NCBI GenBank assembly: GCA_023334545.1 | Contig: JAADVB010000121.1 | Coordinates: forward strand, 1 to 53,676 | DNA: 53,676 nt | Source of the DNA: Salisapilia sapeloensis CBS 127946 | Lineage: Eukaryota > Protista > Oomycota | Direction of reading: 5' to 3' | Shown here: in pieces, positions 17,129-23,703 of the stretch | Numbering within the stretch: position 1 is the first letter of the stretch | Layout: each line of letters begins with the position of its first letter | Notes under the pieces: model-generated | The model's database searches: none | Told to the model about the DNA's origin: nothing | The model's input: only the letters and a program-made list of their open reading frames with translations | Position numbers and translations under genes: made by a program

Positions 17129-18062
17129 TTATTCGTCATCGTCATCCGCCATCTCATCGTCTTCGATCGACTGCAACGCCCACGCATTGACTTCATCACG
17201 AAGAGCATTCGGCACGAGACGATGCGTCCAGTTCGTTTCTTCACAAATCCAACTGAGCTCCAGTTCGAACGGATGACGAACCTCGTCGTGCAAAACGTTC
17301 AGGATCTTGGCAATGTACTTCATCGCGTCACGGCAGGACATGTCAAAGAGAGAATCCTTCTCAATTTCCGTCTTGGCAGCCTGCTGACCCTTGCCGATCG
17401 AGCAGCCACGGAAGCTGTACGAGACACCAGACGGCTCGATCATGTGGAGCGAGTGCTTCTCATCATCAACGTCGTATCCAGCGATCATGATGGCAGCGCC
17501 AAACGGACGCACAGAGCCATGGAGCGTGCAATAGTGGACGAACTGACCCATACGGTCCGCTAGCACTTCTGGAGGAATCGCACTGCCGTAGTTTTGCTTG
17601 TACGCACGCGCTTCTTCCCGAGCGCGGTTCACGAGCTGCCTGCCATCCGGTACTAGTCCGGCCATGGACTGTATCGACGTTAGATTGGGATATAGTAGAG
17701 AGTAGTTATGTGGTCGTACAATGCCGAGGTGACGGTCGACGGAAAAGATGCGACGCTGGGTTCCTGGCACGAGCATTTTCGATAAAAGGGTCTTCTCGAC
17801 GCCCATGATCACGCCATCTTTGCATTTGATGCCGATAGCAGTTCTATTTAATCAGTTAGACATAAAAATATCATCTAGAAGGAGAAGTATGGTGCGTACC
17901 CGCTATTTTCAATGGCTTTGCGCGCATATTCGACTTGGAAGATGCGTCCATCGGGGGAAAATGTACCCGCCGATAAGTCATACTAGAAACACACAAACGG
18001 TCAGTAACCCGCATATACGCTACCGCAAATATAAAACATACTCCTGCTCCAGTGCTTGCCAT
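17129..18062 (-). CDS. PSMA3: 20S proteasome subunit alpha type-3 (alpha7), 2 introns
   Basis: MASTGAG|[28 protein letters not shown]|[17 protein letters not shown]...HGSVRPFG...FELELSW, acidic tail. Confidence 0.96.
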
Positions 18063-18131
18063 GATTAATAAAGTCTACAACAAAAGTCCATATCAAAAAC
18101 CTTGCTCGAAGAATCTACGTAAACCTAGTTT

Positions 18132-19168
18132 ATGCCGCCAAGGAGGAACATAGATAGAAAGACTCGAAAGGGTCCAACCATCCGTGCAGTCTCCAAGGGG
18201 TCTACTACCAATAAAGCGACGTACCTAGCTAGAAGAAGCGTACGTGAGATCGCTTCCACCGTCGCTTGCTTGGTTGTTTTCTTCTTGGTCAAAAGATTTT
18301 CAGTCGAGGTCGTCGTAAGGTTGCTCGAACGAAAAGGCACTTATATGGTACTGTACCGACACAATAAACATCTCCATCAAAAACTTGTATATGATGTCGG
18401 TATCAGCTAGGCCATCTACCGGCTATATGCCGCATGTGGAAGGTGTAGTCAAGCTTGCATATCCTCTTGAACGTACCCCGAGGTCAAAGACGGTGCAAGT
18501 GTATGAGAACCCTCTACATGTGGGCTATGGTCCGTGTGCTGAGACAGCTACTTCGGTCATGGCGATTGTATTGGAATGTACATGATTGTATTTGATTGAT
18601 AATGAGTCTGTAGCTTATATTGCTTGTATGTATAGCTCCGAATTATGAACGCTCGCTTGTGTATTTCTACGATCAATGGGCGAAAAGTGTGGAGCATATC
18701 AAGTCGAAGTACAAGATGAAGATTCAAGGCCGAGGGGTCGTGCAATTCATGTCGACTGCAGGACAAGATACAGAAGAGCCTATTACATGCTACGTCGTTG
18801 CAGAGAAGCGGCTGTTAAAGCATACAATGGAAAAACTTGGCGAACGAGAGACGCCGTTTGCACTGCCGACTGGTGTCGCCATCGCCGTCGAGTATCAGGA
18901 AGCGCAAGAAATTCCCGGAACACATCAAGTCTATTACGTCGAGTCCAAAGTCATTCGAGGCGCAGATCTATACGGTATATGCCTTTGTCAATCATAGAGA
19001 GAGACAGGGAGAGTAATAAGTATATAGCTGAGCGAAAGACGATCACGCCAGAGGCCAAGTCCAAACGAGCGAAAAGCGTGCGTATGCTCTAGACAAGATG
19101 TTAGGTAGCTATATCCATTTATATGTGTCTAGAGCGTCGCGAAGAGAGGAAAGCGCAAATTAGACTTG
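18132..19168 (+). CDS. Basic N-terminal tail + OB-fold-like module, probably the 5' exons of the POT1 gene
   Basis: Five GT-AG introns (18221-18303, 18348-18406, 18578-18635, 18975-19027, 19078-19132) have mutually compatible phases and lead with no stop into ...SVAKRGKRKLDL-MSSTQTKYSY of POT1. Confidence 0.65.
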
Positions 19169-20805
19169 ATGTCCTCTACCCAGACAAAGTACTCGTACGT
19201 CCAGATTGCAGATTTGCAGGAAGGCGACGCGCATCTGTATGGTGTCGTTGTGAATCTGACGCTACCAAAGATGGCAAGAAACGGCTTTGACTTTTACGTA
19301 CGTCCATACATCTGATCTCAATTCAACATGACCTAACGAGTCTGGCGGTCGCAGATTTCCATGCATATTGTGGATGAAAGTTGTAAAAGTCGAGAGCTTG
19401 CTATGCCTGTGAATATCTTTTCCAAAAAGACTTGCAATCTACCTCCTGTCATGGTACATTCCGTCACTAGTAGGCACGTTCCTCTTTATTCATGTAGCTC
19501 TAGTTCATTGGTGATATCATCCGCTTCCATCGGCTTCCCATTAATACCTTCCGAGAACGTCATCAAGGCATCGGCAAGTACGTTTCTATTCATCAAAACC
19601 TATAGACAGCTCCTTGTATTGACGTCTTGCAGACCTCCTAAGACAAGATACGTGATCTTTCGAGAGAATGACGACGGCAGCATCAATCCCATCGCAAGTA
19701 CAGAGAACTACGCGTACACTGATTCGGATCGAGAGCGTATCCAAGCTTTACAGTACTAGCTACATCCTAAAGCCTCCAAACTTCAGTCTTTATTTACATT
19801 TGCTGTAGAAAGTTTAAACGAGAGCTACTTGCTCATGACGATACGCTTCCAGCTGGATGTCCGAACCATCCGATTCCACTCACTCACGTAAAATCAGTGG
19901 AAGACTTTGGAGACATCCTCGTACGTGTTTTAGCTGTCCAGATCAAGGACAATTACGCCAGTCTTATCGTCTGGGATGGTTCGGGCGATACATCTTCTCC
20001 TCTCCATGACGACTTGTTCGACCAGATCCCTTCGAACGTAGAGAAACCTTCGCATGGCATGCTCATGGAACTCTTTGTCGATTCTTGTTGGCACGTCATG
20101 GAGAAAGTAGGATTTGCTAGGTATTTAACAAAGTACTGGTGTCGTTTTCGTAATATCGCAGTGGAAGAAGATGAAGAAGTACGTCGTGGAAGCACGCACT
20201 TCCATCGACTCTTCTTCCGAGAAGTCTCGTCCATCATGTTCGTGCCGGACTATGACATCCAAGTCCAAAAGCGGACGAAGAGTGCGGTGGTACTACCTTC
20301 TAAAAAAGTGGCGACAACTGTACCACCGTTTGTACTGGAGAAGACGGACGTGACGTCTTTGGAACTCGTTCGACAAGCGACAGTCGTGCCTAGAAAGTAT
20401 CATTGTCTCGTCCAAGTGACACAACGATGGCCGGAACAAGTACAGGACCTTACCAAGCTAAAGGATGGTCGGTGGGTCTACTCTTTTGTTTTAAGACTAA
20501 GGGATGAATCCGACGCTCTAGACGTTATTGTCCACGGCACTGATGCAGTAAGCACTTACACTCGTAGCATGCAGAGGTAATAGGCTGACGATACCTTGTA
20601 GGAACAATTCATGCACGGCATTCCACCGTGCGACCTATCGACCAACTCTAGCTCCAGATCTCTAGTGCAAGATCGTCTCGACACTCTCATCCGAAGTGCA
20701 ACATCCGTCCACTGCTGTCTCAAGTCCTATCACCCAACGTTCACGACCGGGTCGAACCCGAGTGTCCGCTACCGCCTATTCGACACCACCTTGCACTACC
20801 ACTAG
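19169..20805 (+). CDS. POT1: POT1/TEBP-alpha telomeric ssDNA-binding protein core (OB1, OB2, C-terminal OB)
   Basis: YSYVQIADL...LYGVVVNLTLPK...DFY|ISMHIVDES...LPPVM|FIGDIIRFHRL (OB1). DILVRVL...LIVWDGS...KYWCRFRN (OB2). RKYHCLVQV...VYSFVLRLRDESDALDVIVHG...HCCLKSY...YRLFDTTL (C-terminal OB). Confidence 0.92.
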
Positions 20806-20863
20806 TCTATATATGTCTTGATGTGAGATCAACTAGGAGGAAATAAAAGTCAAAGGTAGTGCA

Positions 20864-23056
20864 TTATTGTTCGTTGATACTGGATTCCGCCAGACCGGTG
20901 AAACTACTTCCTGGACTCTGTCCATCCGACCGCATGTGCGTCAATGGACCTTGTTGATGCAATTTCTCTAGCCAGTAAAATTGACTACTCTGAGGCGAAA
21001 CGAGACCACCACCAAGTGCATGCTGAATTGCTTGTGACTGCATCATCTGCTGTGATAACGACAGTGTCTGGTGACTCGCATCCATGACACTATCGCCGAG
21101 ATTCATCGACGACTTTTGGAGCTCATCTTCTTGGAACCTCCCGAGACGTTGCATCAAGGCTTCACCTTCGGAACCTCCAACCCATTGTGGATGATTCTGT
21201 TTAAAGTTCACGAAAGAGCTTTCCATCTTGGCATCACTTCCATACTCTTTAAAGTCAAATTCACCAAACCGACAGACTGCACCGGCGTGTGGTAATGTCA
21301 ATGAATGCGAACGGATAAAGACGAGGATCTCTCGCGCACGTTTCGGTAGTGAAAAGCAGAGAATGTAAGGAGTCATGAGAACAGACAGGCATTCTTGGAC
21401 GAACAAGACTGCTTTTACAGGAAAGAGAGACAGGAACTCGTCGCGAACATCAAACGAATGGCAACGACCACGCCATTCCTTTGGAAAGTGGTGCGTCTCA
21501 CCAGCAAGCTGCATCATCGCTTCTTCACAGTCACCATACGGCTGGAAGGCAGGTGAAGATGTCGTGAAGGATCTAGCAACTACGAAGATGCTGGTGCAAA
21601 TCGTTAGATACCAGACGAGCTGTCGTCCGAAGAGCGTCGTCTCCAGCAATAAGGACTCTTCCACGAGACTCATGCCAAGGAGCACTGCCATCAAGGAGCT
21701 TGCACAAAACGAGATACCGCCAGCCAAGATTGCTAATGGACCAGCAGGAAAGAGAGACAAGTATTTTTCTGCTAGAGGATGTGATCGATCAATGCGTGCA
21801 TCGAGGACGTGTGGAAGTTCATTATACTCTCGGAATTTCCATAAAGCATAGTTACTCCATCGTCTAGTGCTAGGGTAGTGACTTCTCGAAGTATTCCACT
21901 CTTGTGCCGAGAGTAGAAAGAAGCGAGAAGCACGATAGATGAGAAGGAAAGGAGTAAGAAGCAAATTGAGGACACCAGCGACCACAAATCGTTTCTGAAG
22001 GACTTTCGGGTCTTGAACAAAGTCTCGCGCGAGACGATGCTGTCCGTCAAAGAGTTGATCGATGAGACAAATGTTCAGGTTCGCTTCCATATTCCGAGAT
22101 AGCATGACATGCGTAGCAGATGCGAATTGTAAGGCTGGTGGCAAGAGCTCTTGACTTGTAAACAACGACTGGTTCATGCAAGCGATGAGATAGTTCTCTC
22201 GGCGCATGATGCGTCGAGCAAAGTCATGAGGACTCGAAAGAGCGGCAGAATCAATGTGTAGACGATAGTTCGAAGCCTGCTTTAGCTGTTTCGATCCGTC
22301 GACGAGTGCCAATACGCGACTGACAATCTCGTCCCATTTCACAGTTTGGACTTGCCGAGCGTCAATATGAAGCCGATCGGTGTAGAAAGCGCCCATAGCT
22401 CTCGCATCTCGCAACGTCCCGATGAGCTGCACGAGGCGGAAGAGCCAGTAGACAACAAACAAAAGAAAGTAAAGACCGATGATCATCTTCCCAGCACCTC
22501 CTTCTGCGCTACAAGAGACGTAGCTTTCGACTGTACAAGTTCGCTTTGGATCTTCATGGCAATCGATCATATCGTGCCACTGGATGCATCCGAAAAGGAA
22601 CGTCGAGAGCACGACGCTGAAAAGACCTGTGACGAGACTCACTGATTCCACTACAACAATGCTCCAAAAGCCTCGATGGTAGTAGTAGTTGTACAGATTA
22701 ATCAGAAACGCATCCAAATTCGCTACACGTCCCTGATTGTCTGGAGCGTACGTCGGTCGACCAGGAGAAGAAGACGGGGCTGTGCCTCCTGCAGCAGTAT
22801 TTGACGTGAGAGACGCTCGGGCAGTATCAACGACATCATGGAAGAGTTTTGAGATAGCAGGCAAGTGAATGTTAGCACGTAAAGAAGGCATGTCGACTGT
22901 CGGAAGAGCCTCGACGTCCGAATGATTCCCATGTCGGTACTGCCGATTGGATTGATTAGAGTGGGATTCATCGTCATCCTTCAGTTCTTTCCAAAGCAAT
23001 TCATCATCCTCTTCAATACGGTCATTCGGTTCACGATCATACATGGGATTCTCCAT
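20864..23056 (-). CDS. ATG9: Autophagy-related protein 9 (lipid scramblase), intronless
   Basis: NLDAFLINLYNYYYHRGF, RIMRRENYLIA, RRWSNYALWKFREYNELPH, multiple TM helices, VCRFGEFDF. Likely start MENPMYD at 23056 (ORF open to 23149). Confidence 0.95.
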   Translation of the reverse strand: MENPMYDREPNDRIEEDDELLWKELKDDDESHSNQSNRQYRHGNHSDVEALPTVDMPSLRANIHLPAISKLFHDVVDTARASLTSNTAAGGTAPSSSPGRPTYAPDNQGRVANLDAFLINLYNYYYHRGFWSIVVVESVSLVTGLFSVVLSTFLFGCIQWHDMIDCHEDPKRTCTVESYVSCSAEGGAGKMIIGLYFLLFVVYWLFRLVQLIGTLRDARAMGAFYTDRLHIDARQVQTVKWDEIVSRVLALVDGSKQLKQASNYRLHIDSAALSSPHDFARRIMRRENYLIACMNQSLFTSQELLPPALQFASATHVMLSRNMEANLNICLIDQLFDGQHRLARDFVQDPKVLQKRFVVAGVLNLLLTPFLLIYRASRFFLLSAQEWNTSRSHYPSTRRWSNYALWKFREYNELPHVLDARIDRSHPLAEKYLSLFPAGPLAILAGGISFCASSLMAVLLGMSLVEESLLLETTLFGRQLVWYLTICTSIFVVARSFTTSSPAFQPYGDCEEAMMQLAGETHHFPKEWRGRCHSFDVRDEFLSLFPVKAVLFVQECLSVLMTPYILCFSLPKRAREILVFIRSHSLTLPHAGAVCRFGEFDFKEYGSDAKMESSFVNFKQNHPQWVGGSEGEALMQRLGRFQEDELQKSSMNLGDSVMDASHQTLSLSQQMMQSQAIQHALGGGLVSPQSSQFYWLEKLHQQGPLTHMRSDGQSPGSSFTGLAESSINEQ

Positions 23057-23703
23057 CCTCAGCGACGAACTAGCTAGCACGAGCTCGAGAGTACTTGTAC
23101 CTGCTCTAATTATGGAAGAGATGGCTGATGTAGAGGATGCGTTCCCCATACGAAAAACAAGATACCGAATGTACCTATTTTATAGGACATCTGGGTATAA
23201 CTTCAAGTTCGTGATATGATGCACGGATAAGAATTGGAGATGATGCACGTCCAGGAGTATGGTGACTATCTTTACAAATAAATTGGCGCGTACAATGTCA
23301 GTGAGTGCATCGAAATGGCGGTCTGAAAGGGGAATTGTTTCCAAGCGAGACGTTCCTGCTGTATTGGAGCCGCTTGAACACAAGCCTGTGCCAAAGGAAG
23401 CTACTGATGAACTCTTTCAAGTAACAAAGGTATATTTTAGTACTATGAACGTCATGTCTGAGCTAATAGGGTATGTCTAGAGGCCTGGACGAGATAATTG
23501 CAAGCACAACAAGTCACGTCCACTTGTCCTGGAGAGCCTATCACCACCAACTGTATTGCTATGAGCACACCTCCCTTTTCCAGTGCACTTACGCTATGGT
23601 CATAGACAAGCGCCGTGGAATCCTAGCAGACAAAAGTTCTATTCATGCCATGAACGAATTTTGAAGCCTAATACCAATACTAGTCGTATGTCGTGAAATG
23701 CAT

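What the first reader, a model, noticed from the sequence alone, without database searches (positions are those of the whole stretch)
18132..20805. POT1 apparently carries an extra N-terminal OB-fold module (4-OB telomere protein)
Seen: the ORF fragments upstream of POT1 can be joined by five phase-compatible GT-AG introns. The last (donor GTGCGT 19078, acceptor tgtctAG 19132) reads with no stop into the POT1 ATG (…AKS|SVAKRGKRKLDL-MSSTQ). The added ~250 aa are a K/R-rich tail followed by HVEGVVKLAYP...SVMAIVLES...RSLVYFYDQWAKSVEHIK..KMKIQG...ITCYVV, an OB-like strand order. VEGVVKLAYP echoes the VYGVVKFFKP of human POT1 OB1. Established: POT1/TEBP-alpha typically has three OB folds, and additional OB folds characterise Cdc13/CTC1 or come from the partner TPP1/TEBP-beta. 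Inference: this is either a POT1 fused to an extra or partner-like OB fold (one-chain end capping or telomerase recruitment) or a Cdc13-like architecture. The competing donor GTATGC at 19082 would give an out-of-frame product, so alternative splicing could switch between fused and separate proteins.
Basis: partly seen in the sequence, partly recalled or inferred. Interest (0 to 1): 0.7.

Follow-up and report, generated by a model that had tools for sequence, protein, structure and literature searches.

The report
Oomycete POT1 with four OB folds

Summary
Spliced contigs from three runs cover 18382-20870 as one molecule with eight GT-AG introns removed. These include 19078-19132, which joins the upstream module in frame to POT1. 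A roughly 94%-identical relative shows the same joint. The joined ORF (ATG 18391 to stop 20805) is 658 aa, with 204 aa ahead of the "MSSTQ" methionine.

Some details are wrong. There are three introns before that methionine, not five. The exons at 18132-18380 and their K/R "tail" are not in the RNA contigs or in any orthologue.

So this is a four-OB POT1. It is not unprecedented: an N-terminal "OB-N" is published for most metazoan and basidiomycete POT1s. Sequence homology to that OB-N could not be tested here. I found no sign of a fused TPP1, of a Cdc13 layout, or of a splicing switch.

Verdict: new member of a known kind, moderate interest.

The parts
18382..20870 (+). Transcript as seen in spliced contigs (one contig per run, three runs)
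   Evidence: table 8: X1 starts at 18382; X2 and X3 start at 18384 and end at 20870 and 20863. All eight introns are removed.
18391..20805 (+). Coding region of the 658-aa four-OB POT1. Exons: 18391-18577, 18636-18974, 19028-19077, 19133-19297, 19355-19453, 19504-19577, 19633-19752, 19809-20547, 20602-20805.
   Evidence: all introns are GT..AG and 50-58 nt long; there is a single open frame.
18391..18964 (+). N-terminal OB fold (aa 1 to ~172; exon 1 plus most of exon 2). Motifs: VEGVVKLAYPL, GYGPC, VYFYDQWA, YKMKIQGRGV, TEEPITCYVVAE, YQEAQEIPGTHQ.
   Evidence: Alignment to orthologues. AlphaFold model of the orthologue module, pLDDT 82.6. Only OB folds among structural neighbours.
18965..19180 (+). 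Basic linker, predicted disordered (aa ~173-208), with NLS-like K/R clusters (KSKRAKS...KRGKRK). Interrupted by introns 18975-19027 and 19078-19132.
   Evidence: 11 K/R in 30 residues; pI 10.45; the equivalent residues 160-198 of the orthologue have pLDDT 32-43.
19078..19132 (+). It joins the N-OB and linker to the OB1 exon. If retained, the frame stops at TAG 19090-19092.
   Evidence: table 5: joint 19077>19133 in X1-X3, and the same joint in relative X5. An intron lies at the same linker position in Phytophthora oleae and Saprolegnia diclina.
19181..19708 (+). POT1 OB1 (aa ~209-330; YSYVQIADL...LYGVVVNLTLPK...GDIIRFHR)
   Evidence: Aligns with the PF02765 region of the orthologues (E 1e-13 to 5e-20; alignments).
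19709..20244 (+). Helical connector and OB2 (aa ~331-490)
   Evidence: Full-length orthologue model: helix 322-341, beta domain 356-480. Weak PF16686 hit in P0038.
20272..20805 (+). C-terminal OB3 (aa ~500-658) and stop codon
   Evidence: PF25507 OB_POT1A in orthologues (E 1e-7 to 7e-11). Window exon 8 gives a weak PF25507 hit (E 0.023) and a weak hit to the PDB POT1 chain 7cui_A (E 0.07).
18132..18381 (+). Not part of the gene as far as the evidence goes; this is the divergent promoter / 5' region shared with the proteasome alpha-subunit gene on the minus strand.
   Evidence: No coverage by X1-X3 contigs. In-frame stop upstream of ATG 18391. Orthologues have no such tail.

Best explanation
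Window 18391-20805 is one gene for a 658-aa POT1 orthologue with four OB folds. An N-terminal OB fold (aa 1 to ~172) is tethered by a disordered linker of about 35 residues (K/R-rich, NLS-like) to the canonical POT1 body: OB1, OB2 and the C-terminal OB3.

Shown here:
- the fused, spliced mRNA;
- the open reading frame;
- the same module at the N terminus of POT1 in orthologues from Saprolegnia to Phytophthora and Pythium, with an intron at the same linker position in the two orthologue loci examined (P. oleae, S. diclina), so the fusion predates the split of these oomycete lineages;
- the OB fold of the module, modelled on an orthologue.

Inferred:
- By position and fold the module is the oomycete counterpart of the OB-N of metazoan and basidiomycete POT1, and of the N-terminal OB of RPA70.
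- OB1 and OB2 bind the telomeric G-overhang and OB3 holds the partner protein.
- The flexibly tethered N-OB most likely recruits or regulates other proteins at the chromosome end, for example recombination or replication factors. In Ustilago, OB-N binds Rad51 and does not bind nucleic acid.
For: RNA: one spliced contig per run in X1-X3 from 18382/4 to 20863/70, all eight introns GT..AG, including 19077>19133. The same joint appears in relative X5.

ORF: 658 aa with no internal stop.

Conservation: an HMMER search with exon 8 found only 22 proteins. Every one I looked up by name is oomycete. The full-length ones align the exon at the same offset (query residue 4 to positions 351, 363 and 313). 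Named orthologues of 574-720 aa come from Pythium oligandrum, Lagenidium giganteum, Phytophthora spp., Plasmopara and Saprolegnia. All carry the module. Its identity to the window is 29-40%, against 29-43% for the rest of the protein. Pfam POT1 OB1 starts only at residues 202-241 in these proteins.

Gene structure: the linker intron is at the same position in P. oleae and S. diclina. No stand-alone homologue of 62-196 aa was found.

Full-length model: pLDDT 84, four beta domains, and a disordered linker at 160-198.

Substitutions against the relative: mostly synonymous (20 of 31), with the non-synonymous ones clustered in the variable loop at aa 28-37.

Precedent: PMC8653790 and PMC9119445.
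Against: - The runs are only guessed to be RNA. The inference rests on the exact removal of eight introns.
- Contigs cannot exclude a minor internal transcription start giving a three-OB isoform from ATG 19169, or intron retention giving a 196-aa N-OB-only product.
- The fold was modelled on Phytophthora oleae (37% identical in the module), not on the window's own joined protein.
- There is no sequence-level link to opisthokont OB-N, to RPA70N or to POT1 OB1-3.
- The functional role is by analogy only. Net charge of the module varies from -13 to +8 among orthologues, which neither supports nor excludes DNA binding.
Confidence: 0.85

Rival explanations
1. The N-terminal OB is a further ssDNA-binding domain that lengthens or alters the footprint of POT1 on the G-overhang, as in multi-OB binders such as Teb1 or RPA70 DBD-A/B, rather than a protein-interaction module.
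For: The nearest structures are DNA-binding OBs: SSB, PriB, RPA DBD-A, Teb1 OB-A/B and POT1 OB1/OB2. Language-model features of residues 1-160 of the orthologue lie nearest to POT1 OB1 (PF02765) clusters, score 0.92, a lead only. Conserved aromatic residues sit on strands (AYPL, YDxWA).
Against: The only tested OB-N (Ustilago) shows no nucleic-acid binding (PMC9119445). The most conserved motif (YEEPQ..P.SDQ) is acidic. Net charge is not conserved. The disordered tether of roughly 35-40 residues and the pTM of 0.50 do not suggest a fixed DNA-binding array with OB1.
Confidence: 0.3
2. The module is a fused partner-type OB (TPP1 / TEBP-beta / Est3-like), so that one chain does the work of the POT1-TPP1 heterodimer, including telomerase recruitment.
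Against: No TPP1, Est3 or TEBP-beta chain appears among the 50 chains listed from 48,161 PDB representatives, whereas RPA, SSB, Teb1 and POT1 OBs fill the list. OB3, the partner-binding domain, is retained and conserved, which would be unnecessary if the partner were fused. An earlier, unchecked note of this scan lists a separate TPP1/Est3-like candidate elsewhere in the genome.
Confidence: 0.07
3. Two neighbouring genes (a ~196-aa OB protein ending at TAG 19090-19092, and a three-OB POT1 starting at ATG 19169) are occasionally joined by read-through and splicing. On this reading the fused form is a minor chimera.
For: A stop codon lies 12 nt into the intron and an ATG lies 36 nt after it. Contigs cannot quantify isoforms.
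Against: The only contig form in three runs and in a sister species is the spliced, in-frame one. The fused architecture and the linker intron are conserved from Saprolegnia to Phytophthora. The internal Met is not conserved. No stand-alone homologue exists in a 5.8-billion-protein collection within the searchable length range.
Confidence: 0.05

Closest known systems
Four-OB POT1 with OB-N of metazoans and Capsaspora (Myler et al. 2021, PMC8653790)
   Different: The oomycete module has its own conserved motifs and no Pfam family. OB3 here lacks an HJRL insert, and I saw no C-x-x-C zinc motif. The lineage (Stramenopila) lies far outside Opisthokonta.
Basidiomycete Pot1 OB-N (Ustilago maydis; Zahid et al. 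2022, PMC9119445)
   Same: A 200-350 aa N-terminal extension before OB1 containing an OB of about 120 aa. The extension is connected by a less conserved stretch. It is present across a whole clade and absent in others.
   Different: Rad51 binding, lack of DNA binding and telomere shortening on deletion are shown for Ustilago only. Nothing functional is known for oomycetes. Homology is untested.
RPA70 and Tetrahymena Teb1
   Different: The body of the protein carries the POT1 Pfam domains (PF02765, PF25507), not the RPA ones. No RPA family scores on the module.
Three-OB POT1 / TEBP-alpha (human, S. pombe, Oxytricha, plants)
   Same: OB1, OB2 and OB3 are clearly orthologous (GDIIRFHR, VWDGSGD, RYRLFDT motifs; Pfam hits).
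   Different: These lack the N-terminal OB.

Membership tests
POT1 / TEBP-alpha family | N-proximal telomeric ssDNA-binding OB1 (Pfam PF02765) | tested here: met
   Orthologues score E 7e-13 to 5e-20, above the cut-off, at residues 202-363. The window's exons 4-7 align to that region at ~45% identity. The single window exons are too short to score alone.
POT1 / TEBP-alpha family | C-terminal partner-binding OB3 (Pfam PF25507 OB_POT1A) | tested here: met
   Orthologues score E 1e-7 to 7e-11. Window exon 8 alone gives E 0.023, below the cut-off, and a weak hit to PDB 7cui_A POT1 (E 0.07).
POT1 / TEBP-alpha family | Sequence-specific binding of the telomeric G-strand overhang | not testable with these tools
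   Needs biochemistry.
Four-OB POT1 (OB-N type) | N-terminal extension before OB1 in the same polypeptide | tested here: met
   Spliced contigs and a 658-aa ORF with 204 aa before the OB1 region. The same holds in more than 15 orthologues.
Four-OB POT1 (OB-N type) | The extension folds as an OB barrel | tested here: met
Four-OB POT1 (OB-N type) | Sequence homology to metazoan or basidiomycete OB-N | not testable with these tools
There is no Pfam model for OB-N. The PDB profile search was empty.
Four-OB POT1 (OB-N type) | Protein-interaction role (Rad51 binding) without nucleic-acid binding | not testable with these tools
   Known only for U. maydis.
TPP1 / TEBP-beta / Est3 OB | Fold closest to the TPP1-type OB | tested here: not met
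   None among the 50 chains listed from 48,161 PDB representatives or among Foldseek's 50 listed hits.
Cdc13 / CTC1 architecture | Cdc13- or CTC1-specific OB domains instead of POT1 OB1/OB3 | tested here: not met
   Pfam finds only the POT1 families in the orthologues.
RPA70 | RPA70N / DBD-A, -B, -C sequence families | tested here: not met
   No RPA Pfam family scores on the full-length orthologues or on the module. The resemblance is structural only.
Internal duplication of a POT1 OB | Detectable profile similarity of the N-OB to OB1, OB2 or OB3 | tested here: not met
   hhalign probability 0.1, E 0.4-0.7. blastp of the window's N part against its C part gives best E 1.4.

The most novel reading that the evidence does not exclude
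The oomycete N-terminal OB is orthologous to the OB-N of animal and basidiomycete POT1. That would be the first case outside Opisthokonta, and would place a four-OB, RPA70-like POT1 at or near the root of eukaryotes, with repeated losses in plants, ascomycetes, ciliates, primates and rodents. The alternative that is also not excluded is an independent gain, meaning convergence on the same four-OB layout.
Probability: 0.4. Interest if true: 0.55.

Novelty: new member of a known kind. Interest (0 to 1): 0.4.

Why it matters
Myler et al. proposed from animal data that POT1 began as a four-OB protein derived from an RPA70-like ancestor. Support from outside animals is so far limited to Capsaspora, basidiomycetes and the RPA-like Teb1. 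An OB fold at the N terminus of POT1 that is expressed and conserved in oomycetes from Saprolegnia to Phytophthora gives a distant lineage in which to test that idea, by profile and structure comparison with OB-N. It also gives a tractable group of plant and animal pathogens in which to ask what OB-N does.

On the practical side, many deposited oomycete POT1 gene models are truncated or broken inside this domain. Examples are P. infestans PITG_03043 at 481 aa and the models that start at 'MQFLKRHYKV'. The RNA-supported structure here can serve as a template to correct them.

Tried and rejected
- Pfam on single window exons found nothing for the module and only a weak OB_POT1A hit for exon 8.
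- Pfam on 18 module sequences at E<=10 gave only chance hits; one Sugar_tr hit comes from a mis-fused gene model.
- PDB sequence searches with exons 1 and 2 and with the module profile found nothing.
- A word-indexed search with exon 2 for stand-alone homologues of 62-196 aa found none.
- ESM Atlas features for exon 2 were uninformative, score 0.76.
- The Atlas structure search returned only generic OB clusters, TM 0.34-0.43.
- Internal duplication was rejected: blastp and hhalign of the N-OB against OB1, OB2 and OB3 show no signal.
- Net charge and pI of the module were tried as a hint for DNA binding; they vary too much among orthologues to use.
- The paper library has no paper on oomycete POT1 architecture.
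- The organism's name is coded in the tools. By similarity it is an oomycete roughly equidistant (38-43%) from Phytophthora, Pythium and Lagenidium, and further (29%) from Saprolegnia.

Full report
**What is in the sequence**

The region holds many short ORF pieces in three frames, separated by stretches of 50-58 nt that begin GT and end AG. A search of public runs found four small runs of one organism (X1-X4; Logan contigs, ~15 Mb each, guessed to be RNA) and one run of a second organism (X5) that hold the stretch.

I laid X1, X2, X3 and X5 on 17900-21100. In each of X1-X3 a single contig, matching the window at every aligned base, starts at 18382-18384. In X2 and X3 it ends at 20870 and 20863. 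In X1 it continues into the convergent neighbour. Eight segments are missing from these contigs:
- 18578-18635
- 18975-19027
- 19078-19132
- 19298-19354
- 19454-19503
- 19578-19632
- 19753-19808
- 20548-20601

All eight are GT..AG. Exact removal of eight introns shows that these contigs derive from spliced RNA, whatever the library label says.

X5, a relative with about 5-7% base differences, has a contig with the same joint. Its first exon-4 codon is AGT instead of AGC, both serine.

Joining the exons in a script gives one open frame of 658 aa from ATG 18391 to the stop at 20803-20805.

**What is not there**

The contigs do not cover 18132-18381. The frame of ATG 18391 has a stop upstream with no other ATG in between. 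Every orthologue starts 10-30 residues before the first conserved strand. The extension is 204 aa.

The K/R-rich stretch that does exist is the linker between the module and OB1 (KSKRAKS|SVAKRGKRK; 11 K/R in 30 residues, pI 10.45). It depends on the unsupported ATG 18132; with ATG 18391 the distance to the proteasome gene's ATG (18062) is 328 nt.

**Is the downstream part really POT1, and is the upstream part extra?**

The part from MSSTQ onward aligns along its whole length with oomycete proteins. In those proteins Pfam finds POT1 OB1 (PF02765, E down to 5e-20) and the C-terminal OB_POT1A (PF25507, E down to 7e-11). In all of them OB1 begins only at residue 202-241. So the N-terminal ~200 residues are additional to a complete OB1-OB2-OB3 POT1.

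**Conservation**

An exhaustive HMMER search of 1.84 billion representatives with exon 8 (by reference) returned 22 proteins. The full-length ones align exon 8 at the same offset as in the window. Look-ups and a profile search name them:
- Pythium oligandrum (695 aa)
- Lagenidium giganteum (689 aa)
- Phytophthora oleae, P. ramorum, P. cactorum, P. fragariae and others (652-720 aa)
- Plasmopara halstedii (677 aa)
- Peronospora and Hyaloperonospora
- Saprolegnia diclina and S. parasitica (586 and 574 aa)
- an unnamed metaclust protein of 713 aa whose first strand, VEGVVKLAYP, is identical to the window's

All complete models carry the module, with these shared motifs:
- G-x-[IV]-K-x-A-Y-P-L
- G-x-G-P-C
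- V-[YF]-x-Y-D-x-W-A
- Y-K-V-x-I-x-G-x-G
- T-E-[ED]...C-x-V-V-A
- Y-[EQ]-E-[PA]-[QI]-x-x-P-x-[ST]-[DH]-Q

After the module comes a basic linker of G-K-R-x-L type. The module is about as conserved as the rest of the protein: 29-40% identity to the window against 29-43%.

The methionine at 19169 is not conserved. In the loci of P. oleae and S. diclina an intron sits at the same place in the linker, a few residues before the K/R motif. So the fused gene, intron included, predates the split of Saprolegniales and Peronosporales. No stand-alone protein of 62-196 aa resembling exon 2 exists in the word-indexed collection.

Between the window and relative X5, 20 of 31 listed coding differences are synonymous. 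Seven of the eleven replacements fall in the loop at aa 28-37, which is also variable in length among orthologues and has low confidence in the model.

**Fold**

I therefore did not send it to any search or folding tool.

Instead I folded the orthologous module of P. oleae (P0023:1-194) with an alignment of 18 module sequences that includes the window's exons 1 and 2. The result has mean pLDDT 82.6 and pTM 0.74. The order of elements is beta1, a long variable loop, beta2, beta3, a short helix, beta4/4', beta5, a helix, and a conserved C-terminal hairpin.

- Foldseek against the PDB gives no hit at E<=0.001. Its listed hits are almost all OB-fold SSB, RPA or HIN domains, with probability up to 0.99.
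- No TPP1, Est3 or TEBP-beta chain is listed.
- The ESM Atlas shape search gives only generic OB clusters.
- Language-model features of the module lie nearest to POT1 OB1 clusters (0.92), a lead only.

A full-length model of the orthologue (pLDDT 84, pTM 0.50) shows four well-folded beta domains: 1-160, 205-315, 356-480 and 529-681. The linker at 160-198 is disordered, with pLDDT 32-43.

At the sequence level the module matches nothing: no Pfam family, no PDB sequence, and no profile similarity to OB1, OB2 or OB3 of the same proteins.

**Comparison with what is known**

Two papers in the library change that.
- Myler et al. 2021 (PMC8653790) report that all metazoan POT1s except those of primates and rodents, and the POT1 of Capsaspora, have a predicted fourth, N-terminal OB fold (OB-N), modelled on RPA70 OB-A. 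They propose a four-OB, RPA70-like ancestor.
- Zahid et al. 2022 (PMC9119445) find the same in most basidiomycetes. For Ustilago they show that OB-N does not bind nucleic acid, contributes to Rad51 binding, and that its deletion shortens telomeres.

Neither paper mentions oomycetes or stramenopiles. The library holds no paper on oomycete POT1 architecture.

So the architecture is a known kind, and the oomycete case is a new member in a distant lineage. Whether the oomycete N-OB is homologous to OB-N or was gained independently could not be tested.

**Mechanism**

Shown: one mRNA, one ORF, four OB domains (the first modelled via an orthologue), a flexible basic linker, and conservation across the oomycete orthologues found.

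Inferred from family knowledge: OB1 and OB2 bind the G-overhang, and OB3 binds the partner.

Inferred by analogy (about 50% confidence): the tethered N-OB is a recruitment or regulatory module like OB-N or RPA70N. The main rival (about 30%) is that it adds ssDNA contacts. A fused TPP1-like OB (~7%) and a read-through chimera of two genes (~5%) are unlikely, for the reasons given under rivals. The K/R clusters in the linker look like a nuclear localisation signal; this is inference only.

**Limits**

- Contigs show presence, not proportions. A minor internal start or intron retention, which would stop at TAG 19090-19092 and give a 196-aa N-OB protein, cannot be excluded.
- The 5' end at 18382-18384 leaves only 7-9 nt before the ATG and may be an assembly end rather than the true cap site.
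- The joined window protein was computed and aligned only inside local scripts.

**Verdict**

New member of a known kind; interest 0.4.

Noticed in passing
window 20864-23149 (-): Single-exon 761-aa ATG9 gene (PF04109, E 5e-136), convergent with POT1. Its stop (20864) lies inside the 3' end of the POT1 transcript (contigs end at 20863-20870), and in run X1 one contig runs through both genes, so the 3' UTRs overlap. The POT1-ATG9 tail-to-tail arrangement is the same in Phytophthora oleae (L001).
   Followed up: partly
window 17129-18062 (-): Proteasome alpha-type subunit gene (PF00227), divergent from POT1. A contig of relative X5 shows a joint 17982>18225 with 33 replaced letters, so the relative differs in sequence around that gene's 5' end.
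   Followed up: partly
P0015, P0028, P0030, P0034, P0036, P0037, P0010, P0019, P0033, P0035, P0039, P0008: Many deposited oomycete POT1 gene models are defective in the N-OB region. Several start inside it at 'MQFLKRHYKV' (e.g. P. infestans PITG_03043, 481 aa) or skip the YDKWA exon. Two are merged with neighbours: P0039 begins with a sugar-transporter piece, and P0008 is 1485 aa.
   Followed up: partly
window 18382-18391: The assembled transcripts leave only 7-9 nt of 5' UTR before the first ATG, which is followed directly by a second ATG (18394). Either the contigs are 5'-incomplete or this mRNA has an unusually short leader, which in other eukaryotes favours leaky scanning.
   Followed up: no
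window 18472-18500 (aa 28-37): All seven listed differences from relative X5 in this 10-codon stretch are non-synonymous. The stretch is the variable beta1-beta2 loop of the N-OB, which also differs in length among genera.
   Followed up: partly
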